A stretch of DNA of 64,000 bases. Source: Macrostomum lignano. Taxonomy: Eukaryota. Positions 6,001 to 62,729 of the stretch are shown piece after piece (positions within the stretch are counted from its first letter, which is position 1; the number at the start of each line of letters is the position of its first letter). Location of the stretch: contig NIVC01000516.1 in NCBI GenBank assembly GCA_002269645.1, positions 372,001 through 436,000 on the forward strand, read 5' to 3'. A program made the position numbers and the translations under genes. The notes beneath the pieces were generated by a model that did not search any database, had not been told where the DNA came from, and saw nothing but the letters and a program-made list of their open reading frames with translations.

Positions 6001-6432
6001 TCAGAGCCAAAGTTACATATCGAGCTGAAACTTGACCAATAGTCGTTTCACGGTTGCAGTTTACTCTGTGTAAAGTTTCGTCAAGATCGGTGAAGCAGAA
6101 GTACCTGTACTCGAATATCAATATGAATTTTGGAATCACATGTATTTTAAATGGAACACATCGAAAATCGCCCTGCTCAGAGCCAAAGTTACATATCGAG
6201 CTGAAACTTGACCAATAGTCGTTTCACGGTTGCAGTTTACTCTGTGTAAAGTTTCGTCAAGATCGGTGAAGCAGAAGTACCTGTACTCGAATATCAATAT
6301 GAATTTTGGAATCACATGTATTTTAAATGGAACACATCGAAAATCGCCCCTGCTCAGAGCCAAAGTTACATATCGAGCTGAAACTTGACCAATAGTCGTT
6401 TCACGGTTGCAGTTTACTCTGTGTAAAGTTTC
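1..6432. repeat. 177-bp tandem satellite DNA, ~36 monomers visible, continuing off the left edge
   Basis: Unit gttacatatcgagctgaaac...ctcagagccaaa recurs every 177 bp. The only variation I saw is CCCC vs CCC in aatcgcccctg (176-bp monomers). The array ends at ...gtgtaaagtttc|atgctacg. Confidence 0.99.
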
Positions 6433-9400
6433 ATGCTACGGGTTGCTTTTAGTATTTTGCTTTTGTTAAAATTTGAATATCAATGCGAATATCAATGGGG
6501 AAACAAATGCGTACGTGGGCCTTTATCGTGTTGTGTTGTCCCTTTCTTCGAATCTTGAATTTATATGTGGTAAATTTATATCGCGTTATTAAATGAATGC
6601 ATAACATAGACTTTGTTAAAAACTTATGGCTATAGACTAAATTACTAAAAATGTTATTTCAAGTAATTATTATCTAGGCCTACTTGTCTTTCCTAGGACG
6701 TAGGTTTCGCGTTTCGGTTGTAGGTCTTTTAGCCTACTGAGCTCACTATCAGTTCCTGTAGACTTATTTAAGTGTTGCATCGTTAAGAAAAAAACTTGAT
6801 AATCACGTACTAGAGCTATAGTAGCCATCGAATGGTTTAAGATTTGGATTAGACAAAATGCAAAAAAATATAACATTTTAATTTAGCAGTTTAATCTACC
6901 ATCTAGGCTAGGCCTCGGGCCTAGTTAGTAATAATCGGTTCACTGAAGATCTACTATATTGAGATTTGTTTGTTTCGTTTGGTAAATATGTCTAAAACTA
7001 GGCCTAAGACAAAGCAGCCTAAACTTTTAGTGTTTTATATGCATTAACTTTGTTAAATTTGGCAAATACTAAAAAAGTAGAACTTTGGCTAGGCCCTAGG
7101 ATACTAACAATCATTTGAGTGATATAAAGTTGGTAAAAATTAATTTACTAACAAGGTTAATATACCATCTGTTATTATGCTTATATACTCATTAACTCAT
7201 AGCCATAACTTATATTATAGTTATATTATACTATCAATCAATCACAAAAAATAATAGAAATTTTTGTCATAAACTTGGGTTGGCAGTTCAAATAAATATA
7301 ATATTTTTAATAATATCTTATTAGCCATGACATAGGCATAAAAATCTTAGTATTGGTATATAATTTTTTAAACAGTTGATTTTTATTCTAGCATGTATAA
7401 ATACTAATTATAATTCTTTTTAAAATTCTAATAAGTTTTAAAGATTTTACTAATTTATCAAACTTTAGAGATTTAATATAGTTAGATAAGCCTTTTTAAT
7501 AATGTGGTAATATGAACTGATTAATTAGGGCCTAATTATGTTTCATATCTTTACCTATAAAAAAGAAAACTCTGTTAGTGTATGTCTGTTTTTTACTATT
7601 ATAATATATAAAACCATGGCTAGCAAATTAGTATATAGTAAGAAATCAAGACAAGTATCTCATGTTAGAGCTGTTAGAAATTGAGATTTGGACCAAGATA
7701 AGATTCGAGATGAGAAAGTCTGAAGTTAAGAAATTTTGAGACAAGACAAGATTAAAAATAAATTTGAAAAAATATAATATATCTCATTACAACAAATATA
7801 CCATAGGATCAGCAGATCCTTTGAGTCTGCTGCCAAATCACCTTGTTGTGGAACTAAAACAATAACAAAAATGTATTAGTACAAGTTTGTATATTAGCAT
7901 TTATAACAATGTTTACATTTATTATGATGATACTAGGTAAACACTTAAAATCTGGACTTTCCAAGTTTAGGCCATAGACAGCAGCTGCTAGCTGCTATGA
8001 AGCCAGAAACTTACTGAGATGCTCTCACACTCACTAGCTATCAGTTCTGCAACAGCAAAACTAGTAGCTCAAACCCTAACAGGCCATGCAGTCACATAAC
8101 AAAAAACAGTGCAGACGCCTGGTCATATAGTACAAAACTAAGTACCCTGGACAGAGCAACCATGCCATTGCTAAGTACTTTGCTGAGGTTAGGTTGGCAT
8201 ACTCCACAGTCTACGCCATTCTGAATCATTACAAAGAAGGCAAGGTCAGGTCGCAGATTCGCAGGGTACACACTAATGGCTTTTAATTGGCTTATTGTTA
8301 ACTCTATGATGATTCCTATTTCTTGTTGAATATTTCCCTGTTAAAAAGTTTGGTTATCCTGTTTATAACCCCACAAAATATAAACATTTAGAGACATCCA
8401 GATTTTAAGTGTTCACCTAGTATAAAACTGCTCAACTAACCTAACCTATCATAGAATTTATCAATTTGAAAATTGTCTTGCTGAAATATTCAAACAAAAA
8501 GCACAGGTTCAACAATAGTATTTAGGTGTTTTGAAGAAAATATTTGCCCTTTCACATATTTTCTTAATCAAAAATTTCATTTTTAGCAATCTTCTCAATT
8601 TTCTTGAATCTCATCTCAATTTTTTTTTACAAAAGTCCAGATTTCTTGAGACAAGAAATAATGTCAAGATCTTGTCTCAAATCTCGTATCATCGAAGTCT
8701 TGTGACACCTCTATCTCATGTGACTTACTAGGCTTGCCTTTTGCTGCTTACAAATACTAAGCATGGCTTCAAATTAAGCTATTTAGCATATCATCAGATG
8801 GCAAACCTTCAAATAGTCCATGCTTGTTTAAGTGAAAAATGCGCTTACTATTGGCACAGTACACTTTTGCCCCCACAGTGAAAGCCAGTTGAAATAAATC
8901 AAATGTTAAACATGAGACATTAACAAAGAGTGAAAATTATAAATGTACTCATATGCTATATGCTGGAAATGTGTGGCAACATATGCTCCTAGCTAATATC
9001 ACAAACATGCTTGGGGACCAGTTTATACATGTGGACTATTAGAGCATCCTCTAGCTTGCAGTAATAGTCATCATTATCTAGAAGGTCCTCAAGGCTTTGA
9101 GGCATCATTTCTGGATATCAGCCTCCTAGTCAGTAAGTATACTGTTGCAGCCAGTTGCCATTTCTAAGTACACTCATAATGCAACAACTGCGACCATCAT
9201 GGCAGAGCCGTCAACCCACTACTGTGTAGCACAAAGCCACAAACACCATCTTAGTATTGGTATATTTGGCAAAACCATCAACTGTAAGGCAACACGCTCT
9301 ATTAGCTACCATGAGTTGTTGATAACCTCACTAATCATTGGGATTGCTAACTGCAAAAAGTAAGCACATCACTAGTGTATGATCAAAAGACCTTATGGGA

Positions 9401-11263: not shown

Positions 11264-11332
11264 TATAGCTTAATCGAGGATTAAACCACTCAACTTTAAT
11301 TTTATCATTTTTTAAACATCAAATCCTAACAG

Positions 11333-11718
11333 CCCAAACTGGTTGCCAGCGAACTACTGGACCTTGTCTGCTCCCAGCTGATGCTGCAAGATAGGCGCTG
11401 CTTTGGCCTCTGCTTCCAGCAGCAGCAACAGCAATCTTCCCTATCTAGCACAGCTAGCAATAACCTGTGCTGGCTGCCCCGTCCACTCCGAGTGCTGGAC
11501 TGCGAAGCTTGCAAACGAAGCGACGCGCCAGTGTTAGAATTTCGCGTTAAACATTTCCCGCCAAGCCTGGTCGAGCTGTCAGACAGGCGGCTTAGCGAGC
11601 TGTTCTATCTGCAGTGCCGACAGTTAATTTATAACGACGATCTGCTGTGCGACAGCGATGCACAGGTGTTTCAACTAGCCGCTCTGGTGCTGCTGGCCGA
11701 GCACGGCGACTTTGTTAA
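11333..11718 (+). CDS. FRMD4: FRMD4-like exon 2 (FERM F1-F2)
   Basis: ctaacag|PKLVASELLDLVCSQLMLQDRRCFGLCF...LCWL..RVL...VLEFRVKHF...ELFYLQCRQLIY..LLCDSDAQVFQLAALVLLAEHGDF, ending AA|gtgag. Matches FRMD4 PKLLAKELLDLV...LQEAKGDF. Confidence 0.93.
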
Positions 11719-11819
11719 GTGAGCAATATTTATTTATTGTGTTATTAATATTATTGTGTCCACGTTTCGTGCGCATGGATTTTAATTGAATTATCCGATT
11801 CTATTTTTTGCCTAAATAG

Positions 11820-11903
11820 CAATACCACTGCCATTGCCGATCTGAGGCAGCACTGTCTGTTCCCCGTCAGCCTGCTGCAGCGGCACCCGTCGCTTGAGTA
11901 CTG
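11820..11903 (+). CDS. FRMD4: FRMD4-like exon 3
   Basis: tag|C...NTTAIADLRQHCLFPVSLLQRHPSLEY-TG|gtgagt. Matches FRMD4 LKEHPSLAYC. Phase 2 in and out, consistent with neighbouring exons. Confidence 0.9.
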
Positions 11904-11944
11904 GTGAGTGGCCTGGCACAGACTTTACCCTGCCGGACATGCTG

Positions 11945-12620
11945 AGAGAGACAGACAGACACTAGGGAGACAGGCAGACACTAGATAGAGACAGACAGAC
12001 ATTAGATAGAGACAGACAGACATTAGATAGAGACAGGCAGACACTAGAGAGAGACAGACAGACACTAGAGAGAGACAGACAGACACTAGAGAGAGACAGA
12101 CAGACATAGTTAGAGACAGGCAGAAACTAGAGAGAGACAGACAGACATTAGATAGAGACAGGCAGACACTAGAGAGAGACAGACAGACATTAGAGAGAGA
12201 CAGGCAAGGACTAGAGAGAGACAGACAGACATTAGATAGAAACAGGCAGACACTAGAGAGAGACAGACAGACATTAGATAGAAACAGGCAGACACTAGAG
12301 AGAGACAGACAGACATTAGATAGAAACAGGCAGACACTAGAGAGAGACAGACAGACATTAGATAGAAACAGGCAGACACTAGAGAGAGAGAGAGAGACAG
12401 ACATTAGATAGAAACAGGCAGACACTAGAGAGAGACAGACAGACATTAGATAGAAGCAGGCAGACACTAGAGAGAGACAGACAGACATTAGATAGAAACA
12501 GGCAGACACTAGAGAGAGACAGACAGACATTAGATAGAAACAGGCAGACACTAGAGAGAGACAGACAGACATTAGATAGAAACAGGCAGACACTAGAGAG
12601 AGACAGACAGACACTAACAG
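11945..12620. repeat. Intronic 42-bp GACA/GA-rich minisatellite
   Basis: Unit attagatagaaacaggcagacactagagagagacagacagac. Confidence 0.95.
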
Positions 12621-12731
12621 ACACACGCCAGAGTTCAGACACACCGGACAGCAGTCCCACCCGAACCAGGGCCTGCAGACGAGACCAGCGACGCCAAACC
12701 TCGCCCGCCACCCCCTCCACCCGATCCACAG

Positions 12732-13028
12732 CGAGCAGCAAACGGTGGTCGCCTATCTCCAGCTGTCTAACAGCGGCCAGCGCAGCCGAGAAGACGCCAT
12801 ACGGGCCTACCTGCGACTGGCCTCCGGGCTGCCAAATTTCGGTCAGTCGCAGTACAGCGTCACGGATTCGAGCGGCTTACCCTGGTGGCTAGGCTTTAGC
12901 CATCGGGGCGTGTCGGTTTACGATTATAACGACAGGCGGCACTATCGGTGTTGCTATTCCTGGAGTAGCCTGGAGAATATCTACTGCCGGGATAGGAAGT
13001 TCACCATCGATGTGCGCTGCGATAGAAA
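12732..13028 (+). CDS. FRMD4: FRMD4-like exon 4 (FERM F2-F3)
   Basis: cag|(C)EQQTVVAYLQL...SREDAIRAYLRLASGLPNFG...DSSGLPWWLGFSHRGV..YDYNDR..YSWSSLENIYCRDRKFTIDV, ending |gtgagt. Matches FRMD4 GIPWWLGLSYKG...WRQLENLYFREKKF. Confidence 0.95.
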
Positions 13029-13079
13029 GTGAGTTGCTTTTCAATAGTTTACCCAGTATCCATTCAGATCGGGACAATT

Positions 13080-34788: not shown

Positions 34789-35529
34789 CTATGCGGAGCA
34801 GTTCAGATCGTTCGGCTGCGCCATCGAGCTGCAACCGCTGTTGTCGGACAGCTCAGGCTGATTGTGATTGGCTGACGAGTTTGCATTGCCAGAGTGATTG
34901 GAGTCCTGATTGGCTGCCGAGTTTGCATTGCCAGAGTGATTGGAATCCTGATTGGCTGCCGAGTTTGCATTGCCAGAGTGATTGGAATCCTGATTGGCTG
35001 ACGAGTTTGCATTGCCAGAGTGATTGGAGTCCTGATTGGCTGACGAGTTTGCATTGCCAGAGTGATTGGAATCCTGATTGGCTGCCGAGTTTGCATTGCC
35101 AGAGTGATTGGAGTCCTGATTGGCTGCCGAGTTTGCATTGCCAGAGTGAAAGGAATCCTGATTGGCTGCCGAGTTTGCATTGCCAGAGTGATTGGAATCC
35201 TGATTGGCTGACGAGTTTGCATTGCCAGAGTGATTGGAATCCTGATTGGCTGCCTTAGCCAGGTGTCTTCTGTGCTTAGCTCGGGAGTTCTGGAACCACA
35301 CCTGCAGCACTCGCTTGCTGAGTCCCGTGCTCGAGGCCAATAGGCGCAGTTCGCATGAATCCGGATTCGGGTTGGCTTGGAAATGCGCCTTCATGGCCTG
35401 CAGCTGCTGCTGCTTGAAGCTGGTGCGCGACTGCCTCTTCCGGCACAGCTGCTGCGGCTGCTGTGGAGTCGGCTCGACAGAGGTGGGCTCCGCTTTGGGA
35501 AACTCTGGATTTGGGAAGCGGGATTTAAA
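34789..35529 (-). CDS. LIM-homeobox gene, terminal exon (homeodomain + repeat tail)
   Basis: ctaacag|...RKRQSRTSFKQQQLQAMKAHFQANPNPDSCELRLLASSTGLSKRVLQVWFQNSRAKHRRH. TSFK..QL..MK, NPD and KRVLQVWFQN are Lhx2/9 (apterous)-type. Confidence 0.93.
   Translation of the reverse strand, partial: FKSRFPNPEFPKAEPTSVEPTPQQPQQLCRKRQSRTSFKQQQLQAMKAHFQANPNPDSCELRLLASSTGLSKRVLQVWFQNSRAKHRRHLAKAANQDSNHSGNANSSANQDSNHSGNANSAANQDSFHSGNANSAANQDSNHSGNANSAANQDSNHSGNANSSANQDSNHSGNANSSANQDSNHSGNANSAANQDSNHSGNANSAANQDSNHSGNANSSANHNQPELSDNSGCSSMAQPNDLNCSA
34868..35253 (-). repeat. 42-bp coding minisatellite, 9 copies, within the Lhx terminal exon
   Basis: Encodes NQDSNHSGNANS(S/A)A x9. Confidence 0.95.
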
Positions 35530-37002: not shown

Positions 37003-37045
37003 CTAAGACACTAAGACAGACACTAAGACAGACAGACAGACACTA

Positions 37046-37115
<70 letters not shown>
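36365..37115. repeat. 12-bp minisatellite grading into (GACA)n
   Basis: Unit cagacactaat(a/g), then (gaca)n next to the Lhx donor. Confidence 0.97.
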
Positions 37116-37117
<2 letters not shown>

Positions 37118-37132
37118 GGACATGTCTCTCAC

Positions 37133-37491
37133 CTGTCGTTTTGTCGGACGCCACCGTGAGGATTTTGTCCCCAACATCCGAGTCCCGCAGCTCCGCCGCC
37201 CGCCGCTGCCGCCTCCACACCTTGGCCAGTTTCGATCGCTGCCGCTGGCGCTTCGCCGGCTTCAGCGGCTGCTCTGTCAGCGGCGTCACCGGCGAGTGCA
37301 GCTGGCAGCGCAGTTGACCCGCGGCGCCGTCGGTCAAGACAAATCTGTCGCCAGTCGCCAGCCGCCGGCCGCAGACGCCGCAGGCGAAGCAGCCGGGATG
37401 GTACAGGAGGTCCCGGGCTCGCATCACGGGCTCGCCTGGCCAGAGGAAAACTCGGCAGGCGTGGCAGCTGCTGGCTGAGTTGCCGAACAGC
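37133..37491 (-). CDS. LIM-homeobox gene, LIM2 exon
   Basis: CHAC...VMRARDLLYHPGCFACGVCGRRLATGDRF...CQLH. VMRARDLxYH is Lhx2/9-like. The strong donor gtgaga at 37132 is phase 1; a weaker in-phase donor lies at 37220. The junction to the homeodomain exon is unresolved. Confidence 0.88.
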
Positions 37492-37509
37492 CTGGGGGGA
37501 TTTTTAAGA

Positions 37510-39445
37510 AAAATTTAAGAATTGTGAAATCGGGGAATTGTGAAGTCGGGGGAATTGTGAAGTCGGGGGAATTGTGAAGTCGGGGGAATTGTGAAGTCTG
37601 GTGAATTGTGAAGTTTGGGGGGAATCGGGAAGTTTGGGGGAATTGGGAAGTTTGGGGGAATTGTGAAGTTTGGGGGAATTGTGAAGTTTGGGGGGAATTG
37701 TGAAGTCGGGGAATTGTGAAGTCGGGGAATTGTGAAGTCGGGGAATTGTGAAGTCTGATGAATTGTGAAGTCTGGTGAATTGTGAAGTTTGGGGGGAATC
37801 GGGAAGTTTGGGGGAATTGGGAAGTTTGGGGGAATTGTGAAGTTTGGGGGGAATTGTGAAGTCGGGGAATTGTGAAGTCGGGGAATTGTGAAGTCGGGGA
37901 ATTGTGAAGTCGGGGAATTGTGAAGTCTGGGGAATTGTGAAGTCTGGGGAATTGTGAAGTCGGGGAATTGTGAAGTCGGGGGAATTGTGAAGTCTGGTGA
38001 ATTGTGAAGTTTGGGGGGAATCGGGAAGTTTGGGGGAATTGGGAAGTTTGGGGGAATTGTGAAGTTTGGGGGAATTGTGAAGTTTGGGGGAAATTGTGAA
38101 GTTTGGGGGGAATTGTGAAGTCGGGGAATTGTGAAGTCGGGGAATTGTGAAGTCGGGGAATTGTGAAGTCTGGGGAATTGTGAAGTCTGGGGAATTGTGA
38201 AGTCGGGGAATTGTGAAGTCGGGGGAATTGTGAAGTCTGGTGAATTGTGAAGTTTGGGGGGAATCGGGAAGTTTGGGGGAATTGGGAAGTTTGGGGGAAT
38301 AGGGAGGTTTGGGGGAATCGGGAAGTTTGGGGGAATTGTGAAGTTTGGGGGAATTGTGAAGTTTGGGGGAATCGGGAAGTTTGGGGGAATTGTGAAGTTT
38401 GGGGGAATTGTGAAGTTTGGGGGAATTGTGAAGTTTGGGGGAAATTGTGAAGTTTGGGGGGAATTGTGAAGTCGGGGAATTGTGAAGTCGGGGAATTGTG
38501 AAGTCGGGGAATTGTGAAGTCTGGGGAATTGTGAAGTCTGGGGAATTGTGAAGTCGGGGAATTGTGAAGTCGGGGGAATTGTGAAGTCTGGTGAATTGTG
38601 AAGTTTGGGGGGAATCGGGAAGTTTGGGGGAATTGGGAAGTTTGGGGGAATAGGGAGGTTTGGGGGAATCGGGAAGTTTGGGGGAATTGTGAAGTTTGGG
38701 GGAATTGTGAAGTTTGGGGGAATCGGGAAGTTTGGGGGAATTGTGAAGTTTGGGGGAATTGTGAAGTCGGGGAATTGTGAAGTCTGGTGAATTGTGAAGT
38801 TTGGGGGGAATCGGGAAGTTTGGGGGAATTGGGAAGTTTGGGGGAATTGTGAAGTTTGGGGGAATCGGGAAGTTTGGGGGAATTGTGAAGTTTGGGGGAA
38901 TTGTGAAGTTTGGGGGGAATTGTGAAGTCGGGGAATTGTGAAGTCGGGGAATTGTGAAGTCGGGGAATTGTGAAGTCTGGGGAATTGTGAAGTCTGGGGA
39001 ATTGTGAAGTCGGGGAATTGTGAAGTCGGGGGAATTGTGAAGTCGGGGGAATTGTGAAGTCGGGGGAATTGTGAAGTCGGGGAATTGTGAAGTCGGGGGA
39101 ATTGTGAAGTCAGGGGAATTGTGAAGTCGGGAGAATTGTGAAGTCTGGGGAATTGTGAAGTCGGGAGAATTGTGAAGTCTGGGGAATTGTGAAGTCGGGG
39201 GAATTGTGAAGTCGGGAGAATTGTGAAGTCTGGGGAATTGTGAAGTCGGGGGAATTGTGAAGTCGGGGAACTGTGAAGTTTGGGGAAATGGTGAAGTTTG
39301 GGGGGAATCGGGAAGCTTGGGGGGAATCGGGAAGCTTGGAGGGAATCGGGAAGCTTGGAGGGAATCGGGAAGCTTGGGGGGAATCGGGAAGCTTGGGGGG
39401 AATCGGGAAGCTTGGGGGGAATCGGGAAGCTTGGAGGGAATCGGG
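37510..39445. repeat. G-rich 16-18-bp minisatellite with ~351-bp internal duplications
   Basis: Units ggggaattgtgaagtc and gggggaattgtgaagttt. Matching blocks start at 38247 and 38598. Confidence 0.97.
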
Positions 39446-39473
39446 AAGCTTAGGGATTGCACAGACAGCTCAC

Positions 39474-39730
39474 AGCCAGTAGTCCCGGCGGCAGAAGATC
39501 CTGCCCTGCCGACAGAAGCAGCTGGTGCACCATTCCAGCGAAGCCGAGCAGCGGCAGCAGCGCAGACAGTTTGAATGAAACTGCCTGCCATCCACCTGGA
39601 GCAGATAGCGCTGGACTATGGGCTCTGAGCAGGCGAAACACCTCAGCAGCGGTTCGGAGGCTGGCTGGCCGGAACGATGAAGTTTCTGCTTGGCAACGGC
39701 GAGTGAAGAGGAGCAATTGGGGCTGTACTG
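39474..39730 (-). CDS. LIM-homeobox gene, LIM1 exon (not a named ORF in the supplied track)
   Basis: cctgcag|QYSPN...CFACSEPIVQRYLLQVDGRQFHSNCLRCCRCSASLEWCTSCFCRQGRIFCRRDYW-CT|gtgagc. Full LIM Cys/His/Asp pattern; phase 2 joins the LIM2 exon. Confidence 0.92.
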
Positions 39731-39739
39731 CTGCAGGAT

Positions 39740-40170
39740 AGTGTCTGCGTCTAGAGGGCTAAGTGTCTGTGTCTAGAGGGCTAAGTGTCTGTGTCTAGAG
39801 GGCTAAGTGTCTGTGTCTAGAGGGCTAAGTGTCTGCGTCTAGAGGGCTAAGTGTCTGTGTCTAGAGGGCTAAGTGTCTATATCTAGAACTCTAAGTGTCT
39901 ATATCTAGAACTCTAAGTGTCTATATCTAGAACTCTAAGTGTCTATATCTATAACTCTAAGTGTCTATATCTATAACTCTAAGTGTCTATATCTAGAACT
40001 CTAAGTGTCTATATCTATAACTCTAAGTGTCTATATCTATAACTCTAAGTGTCTATATCTAGAACTCTAAGTGTCTATATCTATAACTCTAAGTGTCTAT
40101 ATCTAGAACTCTAAGTGTCTATATCTAGAACTCTAAGTGTCTATATCTATAACTCTAAGTGTCTATATCC
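39740..40170. repeat. 22-bp minisatellite in two variant blocks
   Basis: ctagagggctaagtgtctgtgt, then ctagaactctaagtgtctatat. Confidence 0.95.
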
Positions 40171-45291: not shown

Positions 45292-46392
45292 TCACTCGCA
45301 GGTGAACAACCACAGCTCCAATTCTTGCACAACAAAGTCCTCGGCAGCGCCAGTCAGTACAGGGCTAGCAAAGGTGTCGCAGGCCTGAGTTCGGCCCCTA
45401 TAGAGTCCGGAGTCCAGCCACAGTGCGCGAGAGCCAACATTAAAGGAATCAGTGGCGCCGCGCTCAAAAAAGGAGTTCTCCCCAGTCCAGGCGTAGTGAT
45501 AGAAGTCGTTAGTCAGCGGGTTGTGGACGTCGTCCTCTTCGTCTTCGTCTAAATCTGAATCCTCGGATGTCGCCGTCTTTGAGGCGGAGTCGGCAGCGGC
45601 GGCGGTGACCATATCAACTCCGGGATCATTTTTAACATCCTTAGCAGCTGTGGCGGCCTTCAACTGGCCAATGGGATGCGACCAGCGGAACACGAAAGTC
45701 TCGCCAGTGCCGTAGTAGTGCTCGGACATGCGCGGCGGCGCCGACAGGCAGGCGCCGAACAGATGATTGCGAGTGTCGGCCACCAGCAGCAGGCAGTAGG
45801 CGTCGGGATCGGCGCCCGAGTGGCAGGCCCGGTAGGCCGACTGTAGCGAGAATCCGTGCCGGCTGGCCCTGTACAGCAGGCGCAGGTCGGCGCCCTCGGC
45901 CCGCGGCGGCAGACGGCGCACCAGATGCCGCAGGCGGCGACTGTTCAACAGTCGGGACTCGCCGCCTAACAGGCGGGGCAGCGGCAGGCGATCGGCGGGC
46001 ACGCCGGAGGGATCGGCGCTAACAAGGCGCCAACCGGCCGCGCCGTCCGAAGCGGAATCGGCGCCTGGCGTTGTTGTCAGGAAGGACGATTCAATAAACG
46101 CCGGCGCTCGATTGTCGCCCGGCGCTGATTGGTCGGCGGCGCCGGAGGAGAAATCGGCGCCGAAGCTGGTGTCGTTGTTGCCGCAGGCTGGCGGCGCCGG
46201 GGCCGGCAGGGAGCGCAGGAAGTCGCGCAGCAGTTCGGCAACGCTGGACTCGACGCGGAAGCGCAGCGACGTCTGACGGCTGGCTGACGTTAGGCGCCGT
46301 CGGCGACGCTTGGAGCCCGACTGCTGCTGCGCCTGATTTTGCTGCTGCCTGGGCGACGGCGGCGGCGTGGAGCGGGCGGCGTCCGATGCTAC
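45292..46392 (-). CDS. OXR1: OXR1/NCOA7-like gene, terminal exon with TLDc domain
   Basis: ctcttcag|VASD... in frame to SRLL...LPPR...LLY...HGFSL..AYR...LFGA...YYGTGETFVF...WTGENSFF...ALWLDSGLYRGRTQACDTF...EDF.VQELELWLF. Canonical TLDc motifs. Confidence 0.93.
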   Translation of the reverse strand, partial: VASDAARSTPPPSPRQQQNQAQQQSGSKRRRRRLTSASRQTSLRFRVESSVAELLRDFLRSLPAPAPPACGNNDTSFGADFSSGAADQSAPGDNRAPAFIESSFLTTTPGADSASDGAAGWRLVSADPSGVPADRLPLPRLLGGESRLLNSRRLRHLVRRLPPRAEGADLRLLYRASRHGFSLQSAYRACHSGADPDAYCLLLVADTRNHLFGACLSAPPRMSEHYYGTGETFVFRWSHPIGQLKAATAAKDVKNDPGVDMVTAAAADSASKTATSEDSDLDEDEEDDVHNPLTNDFYHYAWTGENSFFERGATDSFNVGSRALWLDSGLYRGRTQACDTFASPVLTGAAEDFVVQELELWLFTCE

Positions 46393-46544
46393 CTGAAGAG
46401 GTGAAATTATTAGAGAAGAAAATAAAAAGAATTTTGAAATTATTATTGGGATTTGCTTATGCTCCGGTGAGATCAGAATTACTCATAGGATTTAGGCTTA
46501 CAAAAAATGCCCGGATTTGTGACCACAGAATTCAGGATCATGGG

Positions 46545-46905: not shown

Positions 46906-46927
46906 AACATTACGCTCGCACAGAAAC

Positions 46928-47455
46928 CTTTAGCGCCACCTCCAGCCACACGGGCCCGGGTCCCTGAGGCCACACAGCGCCGATAGACTGCACATCGGCC
47001 AGCTCGTGGGTCAGACAGAACGGCTCGGCACCTGAGGCGATCACAAGCGGATCGTGCGCGTCCGGATCGAACAGCAGAGTTTCCGGCGTCACCAGCAGGG
47101 TGCCGGATACAACGGCCGATTCCTGGGGACCCAAATCCTCAGACTGTTGGCTAGATTCGCTAGCTTCCTTAGCAACTAGCGTAGCCAGGCCGGCGCGAGT
47201 TTTAACAAACTGCCGCTCGCTTGGATCTTCAACGCGCTCAATGTGGCCAGGTGGCGCCGGCGCCGACGGACAGTCCAAGTCGCCGTCCACCACAGAGGCC
47301 TGAGTGGCGGCCACAGCGACAGCATCCGGATCTGGCAGTAACAGCCGCGTGCCAGGGAACAGGTCGCGGGTTGGGAGGCGATTCAAACGGCGCAACTCCG
47401 ACGGTGTGCTGCGATAGCGGGCCGCCAGGCCTTCCAGGGTGTCGCCTGGTTGAAC
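46928..47455 (-). CDS. OXR1: OXR1/NCOA7-like gene, LysM + GRAM-like exon
   Basis: ccgcag|VQPGDTLEGLAARYRSTPSELRRLNRL..RDLFPG..LLLP (LysM), then VVSGTLLVTPETLLFDPDAHDPLV (OXR1 GRAM-like). Donor AAG|gtttct, phase 0/0. Confidence 0.92.
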
Positions 47456-47489
47456 CTGCGGTATCATTACCGAGCGAGGCGTGATGATT

Positions 47490-47700
47490 CCCTACTTCCG
47501 GTCGGTCACTGGGTGGCCAGCTTTGTCTCTACTTCTGGTTGGTCACGGTCAGAGTGGCCAGCTCTATCTCTACTTCCAGTTGGTCACTGGGTGGCTAGCT
47601 CTATCTCTACTTCCAGTTGGTCACTGGGTGGCCAGCTCTATCTCTACTTCCAGTTGGTCACTGGGTGGCCAGCTCTATCTCTACTTCCAGTTGAAAAGTC
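47490..47700. repeat. 37-bp intronic minisatellite
   Basis: Unit ccagctctatctctacttccagttggtcactgggtgg. Confidence 0.9.
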
Positions 47701-50356: not shown

Positions 50357-50750
<394 letters not shown>

Positions 50751-51306
50751 TATAATTTGTACGTGTGATGTTTTAAAGTAGTATAATCAATTTGATTAGT
50801 TAGCGAGCTCTATTCAAGGACTAATTCAGTACGAGTACTCTACTATTCGTCCCTGTTTGACGCGACAAATCAATCAACGGAATTACAGCTAGTATAGTTC
50901 ATATGTATGTACATGTAGTTCGTTATGCTTGCCCATAAGTGTACATTTATTACACACTTTCATGTCCTTCACTCTAAAATATTAGATTGCTCACCAGGCT
51001 GTATTAGCATCTTGGTCACAACAATCGAGCAAACTAACATACGGTATCACTTTGACTTCCGTCTTACTCTTTGTCAAGGGACAATTACAAGCGAATACAT
51101 AAAGTCAAGTGCCCTGCCCCCGTGCTTTTCATTAACGCCTGGGCGTTCTGAAGCCTTTTTCAGCGCTAGCTGCATTGATCAAATAATGGAGGAAGCATTA
51201 GCTAATTATTTTTGCATTGGCGCGTTGACGGGTATAAAAACAGCGATGATTTACGAGCTACTCTTTTTTTAAACTGTCTCTTCTTTTTCGAACTTTATAC
51301 TTCTCC

Positions 51307-53190
51307 ATGAGGACGATTCGGCTCGCTCCCCTTGCTGCAGGCAGTCCGAAGCCTCAGAACAACAATGAGTCGATCTTTAACATATCAGACTACATCGGCG
51401 AGAGCCAGTGGCCTCTACTAATTCGCTGCTTCCTTCAAGACGACGAGGCAGCGCTGAGAAGATTCTCTCAAAGATGCCCGGACACCTGGCTGAACTTCCT
51501 AACCAGCCGTGATACAAGCAATCATATTCGCTATTGCCCGCCGGAATTCCGGAGCAGCTCAAGTTCGAGCTCGATATCGAAGCAAATTACAGCCCTTCGT
51601 GGCATTCATCAGCAGCCGACAAATCCTTTCCTTATGGCTGTCATGTTCAATGCTAAGCGCTGTTGCGAGTTTATCAAAACTTCCGCTCCACAGTTGAACC
51701 TGGCCGAGGTCAGTGAGTACGGTTTCAATGCTTATCACGTGCTATTTCTGGGACTAAAGGTGCTGGATCAAGACTCAGACGGTCAGCTATCATTAAGCAC
51801 CCAGTTCGCATACATCCGGTTTTTTATTAAGGGTTTTTTCACCCCAGACCAGGTCGATCAAATGTCTCGTCAGGTGAACAGCTTTGGCATGAGGCCGCTG
51901 GACTGGGGTGTGTACACCGGCCAGGTGCATATCGTTGAGAAGCTGATGTACCGCAACCACAGCTGCGGAGTTGTGACTCGCGTTGCTGGCGCAATGGAGC
52001 ACGTCAAGATAGACTTGTCCGACTCTGTCTGCCCGGGACCGGAACGATTCCTGACGCCTTTGGCAATCATGGCCGACGTGTGCGAGACGCAGCTGGACGC
52101 TCTGCGCAGGATGGAGATTTTCCGACAGCCGTTGGTCATTGCCTCCTGGGTCGATGCCATGTTCTCTCGCAGTCGCTGGCTATTGTTGACAAACATTATC
52201 GAGCGAATTTTCCATCTCACTCTGACGCTATTCTTCTTTGACTACACGGTTAGCGATCACCTGGTCGCGGCGTGCACAAACACTAGCGGAGTCGCCTTGC
52301 CAACGGGTTTCAAAGTCACCATTGCCTACAGCCTAGCTGTGAGCGTCTGGCAGCTCGTGGTGCCTGGGCTCGGAGCTGTTCGCAAGTACCGCTACAGACG
52401 CAGAGTTGGCTATCCGAGCGCCTCGGCTGGAAGCTTCAGACTCGTCATGCAGTGGTATTTTCCGCATCTGTCCTGCGGCCTGCTAGCTCTGACAATGCTG
52501 CTGCTGATGGTGGCACCTGCTGCAGCCTGCGATAGCCTCGGCATGGAGCAGCTGCAACCGCTCATCGGCTGCCTGATGCTGGTACACGCCCTCTTCAGTG
52601 TCTTATTCATCCTGCTGCTAAGCCGTCTCATTCCCGGAGTGTCGAGATTCACTAACAGCTTCTACAACAGCTTTGCAATGTTTGGCAATTTTTTAATCTG
52701 CTACGTCCTACTGCTGGTGCTGTTCGCCCGCCTGTTCCAGGCGTCTGGTCGGTTTCAACAGCAGCAGCAGCAGCAGCTGAAGCAGGCGACCAACATCAGT
52801 GGGAGTCAGCAGCAGCCGGAATTCATGGAGTCCTTCTATTGGGCCTTCCTGCTCACACTGAACGTTGTCGATACGAGCACGTTTGCTCCGACGTTTGATC
52901 GTCTGGACCTGCTAGTAACTCTGTTCGTCTTTATCATTCTGGTGCCCATAGTGTTCATCAACTTTGTCACCGGAGTTCTGTCTAGCGTTGTCAGCCACAG
53001 TATGGACCGCGGCGTTGAGTTTAGCTACGTGCTCAAGCTGAACTATGCCGAGCACATGGAGACCAGCTACTATTGGCTGCATCGACTGATAGACTGGGCA
53101 TTTGGTCGAAAGCCCCGCCTGATCATCTCGCTCTGTCTGCCTCTGCGCTTGACTTGCAAGACAATGCAGGAGCTCAGTGGCTCGCTGTGA
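51307..53190 (+). CDS. Divergent TRPV-family (TRPV5/6-like) cation channel, uninterrupted 627-aa ORF
   Basis: Ankyrin-like segments (NPFLMAVMFNAKRC, GFNAYHVL, NSFGMRPLDWGVYTGQVHIVEKLM), a TRPV-like linker, six hydrophobic helices, pore helix/filter FYWAFLLTLNVVD (cf. TRPV6 FELFLTIID), and S6 ending in INFVTG. Confidence 0.8.
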   Translation: MRTIRLAPLAAGSPKPQNNNESIFNISDYIGESQWPLLIRCFLQDDEAALRRFSQRCPDTWLNFLTSRDTSNHIRYCPPEFRSSSSSSSISKQITALRGIHQQPTNPFLMAVMFNAKRCCEFIKTSAPQLNLAEVSEYGFNAYHVLFLGLKVLDQDSDGQLSLSTQFAYIRFFIKGFFTPDQVDQMSRQVNSFGMRPLDWGVYTGQVHIVEKLMYRNHSCGVVTRVAGAMEHVKIDLSDSVCPGPERFLTPLAIMADVCETQLDALRRMEIFRQPLVIASWVDAMFSRSRWLLLTNIIERIFHLTLTLFFFDYTVSDHLVAACTNTSGVALPTGFKVTIAYSLAVSVWQLVVPGLGAVRKYRYRRRVGYPSASAGSFRLVMQWYFPHLSCGLLALTMLLLMVAPAAACDSLGMEQLQPLIGCLMLVHALFSVLFILLLSRLIPGVSRFTNSFYNSFAMFGNFLICYVLLLVLFARLFQASGRFQQQQQQQLKQATNISGSQQQPEFMESFYWAFLLTLNVVDTSTFAPTFDRLDLLVTLFVFIILVPIVFINFVTGVLSSVVSHSMDRGVEFSYVLKLNYAEHMETSYYWLHRLIDWAFGRKPRLIISLCLPLRLTCKTMQELSGSL

Positions 53191-53198
53191 CGGAGAGC

Positions 53199-53900
<702 letters not shown>

Positions 53901-62330: not shown

Positions 62331-62490
62331 AATTTCGCACACTATCTTTCTTGTTTTTTAGACTTATTTTTCTGCCACTTATTTATCTTTTGCTTCTGTC
62401 ACCAACTCCTCCGAGCTACGCGAGTTCATCCGTCACCCGTTCGCATCGCGCTTCCTTACGCCCCCTTCATTCTCGAATCCTTCCTTGCAG

Positions 62491-62708
62491 AACTGCAAAC
62501 AGGATGGGGCCGGCCCGGCCAACGAGGACCCCGACGCTGTCTTGCCAGCTGCCGACTCCGACTGTCGCGATGTCGCCGCGATCGCCCAGTCGTCCTACAC
62601 GATGGCCACCCTGGACTCGCTGGTGGAGCCGCGGGAGCACTGGCCGCACCACATGGACTTCATCCTTAGCTGCGTGGGATACGCGGTGGGCTTCGGCTCC
62701 ATCTGGAG
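62491..62708 (+). CDS. SLC6 (Na+/Cl--dependent neurotransmitter/amino-acid transporter) exon, N-terminus to TM1
   Basis: ccttgcag|...[27 protein letters not shown]|gtaaga. SLC6 signature RE.W...DF.LSC.GYAVG. Confidence 0.93.
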
Positions 62709-62729
62709 GTAAGACGAACTGGACAGGAC

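What the first reader, a model, noticed from the sequence alone, without database searches (positions are those of the whole stretch)
51307..53190. Divergent TRPV5/6-like channel that keeps the Ca2+-filter Asp but lacks the TRP-box Trp and carries a polyQ pore turret
Seen: a 627-aa ORF with ankyrin-like repeats and six TM helices. The filter FLLTLNVVD aligns without gaps to TRPV6 FELFLTIID (recalled), placing Asp at the Ca2+-selectivity position (D542 in TRPV6). An NTS sequon lies in the S1-S2 loop, where TRPV5/6 are glycosylated. After S6, an ungapped alignment from the S6 Asn puts Ser (EFSY) where TRPVs have the TRP-box Trp (ELWR). The S5-pore linker has Q7 plus an NIS sequon. Established: the familiar invertebrate TRPVs (Nanchung/Inactive, OSM-9/OCR) form separate clades. 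Inference: this may be a lineage-specific, Ca2+-selective TRPV with unusual gating.
Basis: partly seen in the sequence, partly recalled or inferred. Interest (0 to 1): 0.7.

Follow-up and report, generated by a model that had tools for sequence, protein, structure and literature searches.

The report
Divergent orphan TRPV-like channel gene
This is an intact, intron-less animal gene for a very divergent relative of the TRPV sensory cation channels; it belongs to a small uncharacterised clade whose only named members are hypothetical proteins of the flatworm Macrostomum lignano, so it will interest TRP-evolution specialists but is not a new kind of thing.

Summary
Fold and profile evidence show a TRPV-type channel subunit: ankyrin repeats, linker beta-hairpin, six TM helices, pore helix, TRP helix and C-terminal strand. 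It is far more divergent than "TRPV5/6-like" implies. Alone, it matches no solved TRPV and passes only Pfam Ion_trans (27.9 bits against a cutoff of 25). Its nearest relatives, 31% identical, are Macrostomum lignano hypothetical proteins. The link to TRPVs runs through a sister clade of unnamed proteins, which scores TRPV6/5 at 110 bits, TRPV3 at 86, Nanchung at 77 and Inactive at 69. Asp522 aligns with the TRPV5/6 filter Asp, in a glycine-free LNVVD filter resembling LTIID. The TRP-box Trp is absent across the whole clade, and the window protein also lacks its usual partner, the S4-S5 Gly (Ser446). It keeps only 5 of the 12 TRP fingerprint residues. The polyQ is a private CAA(CAG)6 repeat. 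The conserved glycosylation sequon is in the turret, not the S1-S2 loop. A proper phylogeny against TRPVL and OSM-9/OCR could not be run. Ca2+ selectivity and expression remain untested. Verdict: a new variant of a known kind, of moderate interest.

The parts
51233..51239 (+). TATAAAA box 74 bp upstream of the ATG; a candidate core promoter for a single-exon gene
   Evidence: sequence only; function inferred
51307..53190 (+). Complete single-exon ORF, 627 aa plus stop, encoding a TRPV-fold channel subunit
51409..51954 (+). N-terminal ankyrin-repeat domain (aa 35-216), about 4-5 helix pairs. Residues ~105-216 align to TRPV5 ANK4-6. A disordered Ser-rich loop at aa 76-100 interrupts it
   Evidence: (DARPin matches)
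51970..52014 (+). Linker beta-hairpin (aa 222-236), as in TRPV linker domains
   Evidence: aligned to TRPV5 ~270-291
52135..52236 (+). Pre-S1 helix and S1 (aa 277-310), including the family-invariant Trp281, which corresponds to TRPV1 W426
52237..52302 (+). S1-S2 extracellular loop (aa 311-332). It carries Cys323, invariant in the core family, and the NTS sequon at 325-327, which is not conserved
52303..52623 (+). S2 (aa 333-367), S3 (374-402), the S3-S4 loop with invariant Cys408, and S4 (413-439, no regular Arg ladder)
52624..52749 (+). S4-S5 linker and S5 (aa 440-481). Ser446 occupies the position of the fingerprint Gly (TRPV1 G563)
52756..52776 (+). CAA(CAG)6 tract encoding Q484-Q490 in the S5-pore turret; found only in this protein
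52792..52800 (+). Turret N-glycosylation sequon N496-I-S; a sequon lies in this loop in all 11 core-family members that cover the region
52822..52872 (+). Pore helix (aa 506-517, with fingerprint Phe514) and the glycine-free filter L518-N-V-V-D522. Asp522 aligns to TRPV5 D542 / TRPV6 D541
52903..53067 (+). S6 (aa 533-558: Pro547, Asn552, Thr555, Gly556) running into the TRP helix (559-587). Ser573 (53023-53025) sits where TRPVs have the TRP-box Trp
53122..53142 (+). C-terminal beta-strand (aa 606-612), the TRPV-type strand that pairs with the linker hairpin
50358..50746 (.). Left copy of the direct repeat flanking the gene: (AGT)n plus about 240 bp
53199..53891 (.). Right copy of the flanking direct repeat: perfect (GTA)165 starting 8 nt after the stop codon, plus about 200 bp that is 90-94% identical to the left copy

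Best explanation
The ORF encodes one subunit of a tetrameric cation channel with the TRPV fold. It belongs to a small, fast-evolving, mostly intron-less clade. The only named members of that clade are hypothetical proteins of the free-living flatworm Macrostomum lignano.

Shown here: the architecture (short ankyrin-repeat domain, linker beta-hairpin, pre-S1, S1-S6, pore helix, TRP helix, C-terminal strand) and homology to TRPVs through a sister clade.

Inferred mechanism: four subunits surround a pore whose outer mouth is a ring of Asp522. These Asp residues top a glycine-free filter, L-N-V-V-D, of the TRPV5/6 type (L-T-I-I-D). I therefore expect a Ca2+-permeable channel that is blocked by divalent ions, and possibly a Ca2+-preferring one. 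The usual coupling between the S4-S5 linker Gly and the TRP-helix Trp is absent here (Ser446 and Ser573). Gating must rely on other contacts. Candidates are the clade-conserved S6 Pro547 hinge, Glu571, and a probable extracellular disulfide between Cys323 (S1-S2 loop) and Cys408 (S3-S4 loop). By analogy with other TRPVs, the likely role is sensory or Ca2+-entry signalling. The activating stimulus is unknown.
For: - The ORF is intact with a coding-type GC3 bias.
- There are 22 homologues in 1.84 billion representative proteins, the best at E=1.2e-70 and 31% identity. Named hits are all M. lignano 'Ion_trans domain-containing' proteins.
- Pfam Ion_trans is just above its cutoff.
- Two template-free AF2 models (pLDDT 78 and 72, pTM 0.74 and 0.68) show the complete set of TRPV elements. 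The second model was built without any sister-clade sequence. In both, all of the top 50 Foldseek PDB hits are TRPV1-6, aligned full length.
- The core-family profile hits TRPV5 as the only solved TRP channel (E=2.4e-4).
- Core family against sister clade by hhalign: probability 99.9%, E=9e-35 over 520 columns.
- The sister clade against PDB scores TRPV6/5 at E~1e-30 in one full-length alignment.
- Asp522, Phe514, Asn552 and Trp281 align to the TRPV fingerprint and filter residues.
- The window protein departs from clade-conserved residues no more often than its Macrostomum relatives do (9 of 34 against 9-10 of 36). This argues against decay.
Against: - There is no transcript or protein evidence for this gene. 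The exact protein is not in the public collection.
- The protein alone finds no TRPV by sequence.
- Only 5 of 12 TRP fingerprint residues are kept, fewer than in any subfamily tabulated in PMC9242649.
- It uniquely replaces a His that all 14 relatives aligned at that column keep at the top of S6 (H to L539), and it has Thr555 at the position of the gate Ile.
- Pore geometry was not examined in a tetramer.
- The closest relative has Asn rather than Asp at the filter position, so a Ca2+ site is not a fixed property of the clade.
Confidence: 0.78

Rival explanations
1. It is a true functional counterpart of TRPV5/6: a constitutively open, highly Ca2+-selective epithelial-type channel. In this reading the Asp ring is inherited from a TRPVC/D-type ancestor.
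For: - The filter is glycine-free: LNVVD here, LNIVD in the family, against LTIID in TRPV5/6, in the same register.
- TRPV5/6 are the best-scoring solved relatives for both the core family and the sister clade.
- TRPVC/D-type genes exist and have duplicated in lophotrochozoans (PMC9664204; PMC12980990).
Against: - TRPV5/6 proper arose in deuterostomes, so orthology is excluded.
- Foldseek shows no preference among TRPV1-6.
- From my own knowledge, the Asp also occurs in the non-selective TRPV1-4.
- P0001 has Asn and P0017 has Ser at this position.
- The score ranking is not a phylogeny.
- Selectivity cannot be read from sequence.
Confidence: 0.2
2. It is a divergent member of TRPVL, the sister family of TRPV. 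TRPVL is known from cnidarians, annelids, a mollusc and unicellular holozoans.
For: - The TRPVL consensus also lacks the TRP-box Trp (Ala instead) and keeps only 7 of 12 fingerprint residues (PMC9242649).
- Two sister-clade members have the TRPVL-like N-x-F-I-A in S6.
- TRPVL occurs in spiralians and in protists, which could account for the unnamed metagenome relatives.
Against: - At the S6 position where the TRPVL consensus has Trp (TRPV1 Y666), both clades have Tyr or Phe. One core-family member, P0005, has Ile.
- The core family has N-x-I-I-G, not N-x-F-I-A.
- The sister clade scores TRPV5/6 far above Nanchung/Inactive. That is not expected of an outgroup to all TRPVs.
- No TRPVL sequence could be fetched, so there was no direct comparison.
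Confidence: 0.2
3. It is a silent or non-conducting copy: either a recently inserted or duplicated intron-less gene that is not expressed, or one that serves only as a modulatory subunit.
For: - The gene has one exon and sits between two copies of a ~390-bp repeat that includes a microsatellite.
- The stop codon lies 8 nt before a 496-bp (GTA)165 array, and there is no AATAAA until 54031.
- A His that all 14 relatives aligned at that column keep is replaced by Leu539, and there is a private CAG repeat in the turret.
- No record of the exact protein exists.
Against: - The 627-codon frame is intact within DNA that is 47% tandem repeat.
- There is a TATA box 74 bp upstream.
- Being intron-less is normal for the clade. 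Loci L002-L006 are uninterrupted ORFs, and one of the two M. lignano paralogues in locus L001 is intron-less.
- Conservation violations are no higher than in relatives.
- No trace of a parent or second copy exists in the window.
Confidence: 0.12

Closest known systems
Vertebrate TRPV5/TRPV6 (epithelial Ca2+ channels; TRPVD lineage)
   Same: - Overall fold and domain order.
- A filter without glycine that ends in an Asp at the aligned position (LNVVD against LTIID).
- A sequon in the S1-S2 loop.
- They are the best-scoring solved relatives.
   Different: - About 11-13% identity in structural alignments.
- No TRP-box Trp and no S4-S5 Gly.
- A shorter ankyrin domain (~4-5 repeats against 6).
- An S6 Pro, Gly556 in place of Ala, and conserved extracellular Cys323/Cys408.
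- It cannot be an orthologue, because TRPVD arose in deuterostomes.
Macrostomum lignano hypothetical proteins PAA64149.1 / PAA49257.1 / A0A1I8HKA1 ('Ion_trans domain-containing protein')
   Same: - Same clade, with 100% bootstrap in a simple NJ tree.
- 29-31% identity over the full length.
- Same architecture, cysteines, turret sequon and missing Trp.
   Different: - Only ~30% identical.
- P0001 has Asn at the filter Asp position.
- In locus L001, P0001's gene lies in tandem with a second paralogue that is 55% identical to it. P0001's gene has one ~89-bp intron and the other paralogue has none.
- None has the polyQ.
Lophotrochozoan TRPVC/D-like channels and unclassified TRPV-like genes (e.g. 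abalone Hdh-TRP_21/22)
   Same: These are spiralian, lineage-specifically duplicated TRPV relatives that are closer to vertebrate TRPVs than to Nan/Iav, and some resist classification. The score ranking of the sister clade fits this pattern.
   Different: No sequences were available for comparison, so any relationship is an inference. The window clade is much more divergent than typical TRPVC/D genes, which NCBI had annotated as 'TRPV5-like' or 'TRPV6-like'.
TRPVL (vanilloid-like TRP family)
   Same: An ankyrin-bearing sister group of TRPV, with no TRP-box Trp and a reduced fingerprint.
   Different: The S6 residues differ: Tyr/Phe (Ile in one member) against Trp, and I-I-G against F-I-A. This is a fingerprint comparison only. 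A direct test was not possible.
Nanchung/Inactive and OSM-9/OCR (TRPVB/TRPVA)
   Same: Invertebrate TRPV channels with the same general fold. Canonical TRPVs of this kind are known in free-living flatworms, including Macrostomum (PMC5196486).
   Different: The solved Nanchung and Inactive structures score 33-40 bits below TRPV5/6 against the sister-clade profile, and they do not reach E=1e-3 against the core family. Nan/Iav proteins are also much larger (882-984 residues in the solved chains).

Membership tests
TRP channel superfamily, group 1 (6TM tetrameric cation channels) | Six TM helices with a re-entrant pore helix between S5 and S6 (Ion_trans fold) | tested here: met
   Pfam Ion_trans scores 27.9 bits against a cutoff of 25, covering aa 419-564. 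Both AF2 models show S1-S6 and a pore helix at 506-517.
TRP channel superfamily, group 1 | The 12-residue TRP fingerprint W F Y/F G Y/F Y/F Y/F N L I A W (PMC9242649); 95% of TRPs keep at least 9 | tested here: not met
   Five of 12 are kept: W281, F473, F514, F542 and N552. The others are replaced: S289, N296, S446, V554, T555, G556 and S573. The two S1 positions were mapped by ungapped counting and are less certain.
TRPV family (sensu lato) | N-terminal ankyrin-repeat domain (six repeats in solved TRPVs) | tested here: inconclusive
   Ankyrin-type helix pairs span aa 35-216. One repeat matches DARPins, and aa ~105-216 align to TRPV5 ANK4-6. Pfam ANK stays below threshold, and there is room for only about 4-5 repeats.
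TRPV family (sensu lato) | Linker beta-hairpin plus a C-terminal beta-strand after the TRP helix | tested here: met
   Strands at 222-227, 230-236 and 606-612 appear in both models. The C-terminal strand motif is conserved in the family alignment.
TRPV family (sensu lato) | TRP helix carrying the TRP box with its invariant Trp (TRPV1 W697) | tested here: not met
   A helix follows S6 (aa 559-587), but the Trp position is Ser573. It is variable and never Trp in any of the 15 family and sister-clade members aligned at that column.
TRPV family (sensu lato) | Significant sequence or structural similarity to TRPVs above other TRP families | tested here: met
   All top 50 Foldseek hits of both models are TRPV1-6. 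For the core-family profile, TRPV5 is the only solved TRP channel at E<1e-3. The link through the sister clade is strong: E=9e-35, then E~1e-30. The protein alone finds nothing.
TRPV family (sensu lato) | Placement inside the TRPV clade in a phylogeny with TRPA/TRPN/TRPVL outgroups | not testable with these tools
   No TRPVL, OSM-9/OCR or outgroup sequences could be retrieved. All three word-indexed searches returned no named relatives.
TRPV5/6 (TRPVD) | Asp ring at the outer end of a glycine-free filter (TIID) | tested here: met
   L518-N-V-V-D522 aligns without gaps to L-T-I-I-D in the HMM alignments. The Asp is kept in 10 of the 11 core-family members aligned there. Whether it lines the pore was not checked in a tetramer.
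TRPV5/6 (TRPVD) | Orthology with, or clade membership in, vertebrate TRPV5/6/7/8 | not testable with these tools
   Score ranking favours TRPV5/6. The published phylogeny dates TRPVD to a deuterostome duplication, so a protostome gene cannot be an orthologue.
TRPV5/6 (TRPVD) | High Ca2+ selectivity, inward rectification and Ca2+/calmodulin-dependent inactivation | not testable with these tools
   This needs electrophysiology.
TRPV5/6 (TRPVD) | N-glycosylation in the S1-S2 loop (TRPV5 N358, from my own knowledge) | tested here: inconclusive
   The sequon N325-T-S lies in the S1-S2 loop. Within the core family only P0008 and P0013 also have one there. The conserved sequon is in the turret.
TRPVL | TRPVL consensus at the fingerprint positions (W - N G Y/F F W N F I A A) | tested here: inconclusive
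   It shares the missing Trp and Asn296 at the Y441 position. It differs at the Y666 position (Phe542, not Trp), at L678/I679/A680 (V-T-G, not F-I-A) and at G563 (Ser). No TRPVL sequences were compared directly.
Nanchung/Inactive (TRPVB/TRPVA) | Closer similarity to Nan/Iav than to other TRPVs | tested here: not met
   Sister-clade profile scores: TRPV6 110 bits, TRPV5 109, TRPV3 86, Nanchung 77, Inactive 69. With the core family, neither Nanchung nor Inactive reaches E=1e-3.

The most novel reading that the evidence does not exclude
The window protein, its Macrostomum relatives and about ten unnamed proteins may form an undescribed TRP subfamily of the same rank as TRPVL or TRPS. Its proposed features would be: mostly intron-less genes; a glycine-free Asp filter that evolved or survived independently of TRPV5/6; an extracellular Cys323-Cys408 staple; and gating that manages without the otherwise near-universal S4-S5 Gly / TRP-helix Trp contact, using an S6 proline hinge instead.
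Probability: 0.3. Interest if true: 0.6.

Novelty: new variant of a known kind. Interest (0 to 1): 0.42.

Why it matters
TRP channels are defined by a handful of near-invariant residues. The most conserved contact among these fingerprint residues is between the S4-S5 linker Gly and the TRP-helix Trp (PMC9242649), and it is thought to couple sensing to the gate. A natural clade that keeps the TRPV fold and a TRPV5/6-type Asp filter without that Trp, and in this protein without the Gly as well, is a ready-made test of how necessary the contact is. It could also show whether glycine-free Asp filters give Ca2+ selectivity outside vertebrates.

It also adds to the TRP repertoire of free-living flatworms, where so far only canonical TRPVs have been noted and parasitic relatives have none (PMC5196486). 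Current TRP surveys that rely on Pfam ankyrin plus Ion_trans hits, or on BLAST to model-organism TRPs, would miss this clade.

Tried and rejected
- The word-indexed homologue search failed three times. The window protein and alignment A1 each gave 8000 candidates and no scored hit, probably because polyS and polyQ words swamped the candidate list. P0021 found only four unnamed ENA proteins. Profile bit scores against PDB were used as a surrogate.
- The exact-protein contig look-up for the window protein found nothing, so the source organism and any transcript evidence remain unknown.
- NCBIfam gave no hit. Rfam and tRNA scans of the window gave nothing.
- A precomputed Pfam YVC1_C label on sister-clade proteins was not reproduced at E<=0.01 and was dropped.
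- A first NJ script timed out. A second produced NaN distances. The corrected version is.
- I looked for a relic second channel copy or a parent gene next to the flanking repeats and found none.
- I considered pseudogene decay and rejected it as the main reading: the frame is intact and conservation violations are no more frequent than in relatives.
- Supplementary files of the TRP papers hold accession numbers only, not sequences.
Full report
**1.

Window 51307..53190 (+) is one uninterrupted 627-codon frame. The nearest upstream in-frame stop is at 51247, and a TATAAAA box lies at 51233, 74 bp before the ATG. GC at third codon positions is 0.67, against about 0.44 for the surrounding DNA.

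- FLLTLNVVD at 514-522, with Asp522
- EFSY at 571-574
- Q7 at 484-490
- NTS at 325
- NIS at 496

Counting without gaps from the S6 Asn552, position +21 is Ser573. That is the offset of the TRP-box Trp in TRPV5 (N572 to W593, visible in the alignment).

**2. The protein is much more divergent than "TRPV5/6-like" suggests.**

- On its own it passes only Pfam Ion_trans, and narrowly (27.9 bits against a cutoff of 25). The ankyrin models stay below threshold.
- phmmer against all PDB sequences finds no channel.
- An exhaustive phmmer scan of 1.84 billion representative proteins finds just 22 relatives. The best is at E=1.2e-70 and 31% identity.
- The only relatives with names are Macrostomum lignano hypothetical or "Ion_trans domain-containing" proteins: PAA64149.1, PAA49257.1, A0A1I8HKA1, A0A1I8HLH7 and A0A1I8GXR8. 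One short 246-aa fragment is labelled as a bacterial MAG protein. The rest are unnamed proteins from Logan and ENA assemblies.

A simple NJ tree with 300 bootstraps separates three groups, each with 100% support:
- the window protein plus Macrostomum
- P0004-P0013
- a more TRPV-like sister clade: P0017, P0020, P0021, P0028-30

**3. What it is.**

I made two template-free AlphaFold2 models. One used alignment A1 (pLDDT 78.4, pTM 0.74). The other used only the core family A2, with no sister-clade sequence (pLDDT 72.4, pTM 0.68). Both give the same architecture:

| Element | Residues |
|---|---|
| Ankyrin-type helix pairs | 35-216 |
| Beta-hairpin | 222-236 |
| Pre-S1 and S1 | 277-310 |
| S2 | 333-367 |
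| S3 | 374-402 |
| S4 | 413-439 |
| S5 (runs on into the polyQ) | 446 to about 481 |
| Pore helix | 506-517 |
| Filter loop | 518-522 |
| S6, continuous with a TRP helix | 533-587 |
| C-terminal strand | 606-612 |

For both models, all of the top 50 Foldseek hits in the PDB are TRPV1-6 chains aligned over essentially the full length. TM-scores are about 0.45-0.6 and identity is 11-14%. No TRPV subtype is preferred.

The sequence evidence is transitive:
- The core-family profile alone reaches only TRPV5 among solved channels (E=2.4e-4), plus designed ankyrin proteins.
- The core family is homologous to the sister clade over 520 columns (hhalign probability 99.9%, E=9e-35).
- The sister-clade profile aligns in one piece to TRPV6/5 at E~1e-30.

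**4. How far the TRPV5/6 reading goes.**

The sister-clade profile scores against solved structures as follows:

| Solved channel | Bits |
|---|---|
| TRPV6 | 110 |
| TRPV5 | 109 |
| TRPV3 | 86 |
| Nanchung | 77 |
| TRPV4 | 74 |
| TRPV1 | 71 |
| TRPV2 | 69.5 |
| Inactive | 69 |

P0017 alone prefers TRPV5/6 (46 bits) to TRPV3 (30 bits).

In the HMM alignments the family filter SLNIVD (LNVVD in the window protein) lies without gaps on TRPV5/6 FLTIID. Asp522 falls on D542/D541, Phe514 on the fingerprint pore-helix Phe, and a polar Asn sits where TRPV6 has Thr. The filter lacks the glycine that 86% of TRPs have there (PMC9242649). In this respect it is TRPV5/6-like.

There are four limits to this reading:
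- A score ranking is not a phylogeny.
- Published trees place the origin of TRPV5/6 (TRPVD) at a deuterostome duplication of a TRPVC/D gene. Lophotrochozoans keep, and have duplicated, that TRPVC/D gene (PMC9664204). A flatworm-type gene can therefore be TRPVC/D-like at most.
- From my own knowledge, the aligned Asp is also present in the non-selective TRPV1-4 (TRPV1 D646).
- The closest relative P0001 has Asn and P0017 has Ser at that position.

**5. What is unusual.**

I mapped the 12 TRP fingerprint residues (PMC9242649, Table 1) onto the protein.
- Kept: W281, F473, F514, F542, N552.
- Lost: S289, N296, S446, V554, T555, G556, S573.

Five of 12 is below the lowest group-1 subfamilies in that table (TRPVL and TRPS, 7 each).

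The missing Trp is not peculiar to this gene. The position is variable and never Trp in any of the 15 aligned members of both clades. Its structural partner, the S4-S5 linker Gly (TRPV1 G563), is Ser446 here. It is Thr in the Macrostomum proteins, and Gly only in some other members. PMC9242649 describes that Gly-Trp contact as the most conserved interaction among the fingerprint residues.

Features specific to the clade:
- Cys323 in the S1-S2 loop and Cys408 in the S3-S4 loop are invariant in the core family. Both are extracellular in the model. The sister clade lacks both. I infer a disulfide.
- Pro547 lies five residues before the S6 Asn.
- Gly556 replaces the fingerprint Ala.
- Glu571 is nearly invariant.

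The window protein alone replaces a His that all 14 relatives aligned at that column keep (Leu539). Overall, though, it departs from clade-conserved positions no more often than its Macrostomum relatives do (9 of 34 against 9-10 of 36). So there is no sign of decay.

**6.

- The polyQ is encoded by CAA(CAG)6 and no homologue has it. It is a private trinucleotide expansion in a genome region that is 47% tandem repeat, not a family feature.
- The NTS sequon does lie in the S1-S2 loop, but within the core family only P0008 and P0013 also have a sequon there.
- The sequon that is conserved is the one in the S5-pore turret. It is present in all 11 core-family members that cover the region. From my own knowledge, that is where TRPV1 and TRPV4, rather than TRPV5/6, are glycosylated.
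- The ankyrin domain is real but short, with about 4-5 repeats. Residues ~105-216 align to TRPV5 ANK4-6.

**7. Genomic setting.**

The window is animal DNA packed with mini- and microsatellites. It contains recognisable exons of these genes:
- a FERM-domain gene (11.3-13.0 kb, +)
- a LIM-homeobox gene (34.8-39.8 kb, -)
- a LysM/TLDc (OXR1-like) gene (45.3-47.5 kb, -)
- an SLC6 transporter (62.4-62.7 kb, +)

The channel gene is a single exon. This is typical of the clade:
- Relatives on contigs L002-L006 are uninterrupted ORFs.
- In M. lignano locus L001 two paralogues lie in tandem. One has no intron and the other has one intron of ~89 bp.

The gene block 50747-53198 sits between two copies of a repeat of about 390 bp. 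Each copy is a microsatellite plus ~200-240 bp, and the unique parts are 90-94% identical. The right copy begins 8 nt after the stop codon with a perfect (GTA)165 array. There is no relic of a second channel copy nearby. How this arrangement arose is unexplained.

**8. Mechanism.** Steps are marked as shown or inferred.

- Shown: a TRPV-fold subunit with an Asp at the filter position.
- Inferred: the protein forms tetramers.
- Inferred: a ring of four Asp522 sits above the N519/V520/V521 filter. This would give a cation pore that is permeable to Ca2+ and blocked by divalent ions. I put the chance of true TRPV5/6-grade selectivity at about 0.2.
- Inferred: gating is not latched by the Gly-Trp contact. 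It may use the S6 Pro547 hinge, Glu571 and the extracellular Cys-Cys staple.
- Unknown: the stimulus.

**9. Comparison and novelty.**

Canonical TRPVs (OSM-9/OCR-like) are already known in free-living flatworms, including Macrostomum, and are absent from parasitic flatworms (PMC5196486). I found no paper describing this divergent clade.

Unclassified TRPV-like genes near TRPV/TRPVL have been reported in abalone (PMC12980990). TRPVL has recently been extended to unicellular holozoans. TRPVL membership therefore remains a live alternative that I could not test directly.

I rate the finding a new variant of a known kind. The fold and general function are those of TRPV channels. The clade is uncharacterised and departs from the family's hallmark residues.

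**10. Limits.**

- No phylogeny with TRPVL, OSM-9/OCR or outgroups could be built.
- No tetramer model was made and no coordinates could be inspected.
- There are no expression data.
- The source organism is not identified. The closest named relatives point to a free-living flatworm or another spiralian.

Noticed in passing
window 50358-50746 and 53199-53891: The channel gene and its promoter lie between two direct copies of one unit, each a trinucleotide microsatellite plus ~200-240 bp (unique parts 90-94% identical). The right-hand array is a perfect (GTA)165 that starts 8 nt after the stop codon. This is too long for a target-site duplication, and there is no second gene copy nearby. Its origin is unexplained.
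   Followed up: partly
window 1-6432: A 177-bp satellite in 36.4 copies at 99% identity runs off the left end of the window. It produces long artefactual ORFs on the minus strand.
   Followed up: no
whole window: 47% of the 64 kb is tandem repeat, made up of dozens of different minisatellites with periods of 12-50 bp, each 0.3-2 kb long. They fill the introns and intergenic DNA between ordinary animal genes. This density is unusually high.
   Followed up: partly
window 34789-35394 (-), with 37026-37514 (-) and 39473-39772 (-): Exons of a LIM-homeobox gene: two LIM domains and a homeodomain. The homeodomain exon runs on into a 42-bp coding minisatellite (9.3 copies, 95% identical; 34865-35254). 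This gives a tandem 14-residue repeat (NQDSNHSGNANS[AS]A) right after the homeodomain.
   Followed up: partly
window 45292-46482 (-) and 46910-47491 (-): LysM and TLDc domain exons of an OXR1/NCOA7-like gene lie 4-6 kb upstream of the channel gene on the opposite strand.
   Followed up: partly
window 11330-13029 (+) and 62362-62709 (+): FERM_N/FERM_M/FERM_C exons of a FERM-domain gene. At the right edge of the window there is a weak, sub-threshold SNF match (26.1 bits against a cutoff of 27) that could be the start of an SLC6 transporter exon.
   Followed up: partly
locus L001 (Macrostomum lignano NIVC01001778.1) 2059-3912 and 6001-7970: Two paralogues of the channel lie head to tail about 2 kb apart and are 55% identical to each other. 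The upstream copy has no intron, and the gene table for this stretch did not list it as a gene.
   Followed up: partly
loci L003 and L006 (ENA metagenome assemblies, contigs of 0.38 and 1.56 Mb): Sister-clade TRPV-like genes occur as uninterrupted ORFs of 584-628 codons on very long contigs in assemblies labelled as metagenomes. These are eukaryotic genomes, either small animals or protists, inside metagenomic data. One related 246-aa fragment (P0014, MEL7309700.1) is annotated as a Pseudomonadota MAG protein, which is probably a binning error.
   Followed up: no
window 51307-53190, aa 539: The window protein alone has Leu where all 14 relatives aligned at that column, in both clades, have an invariant His at the extracellular end of S6. 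This could matter for proton or metal sensing in the family.
   Followed up: no
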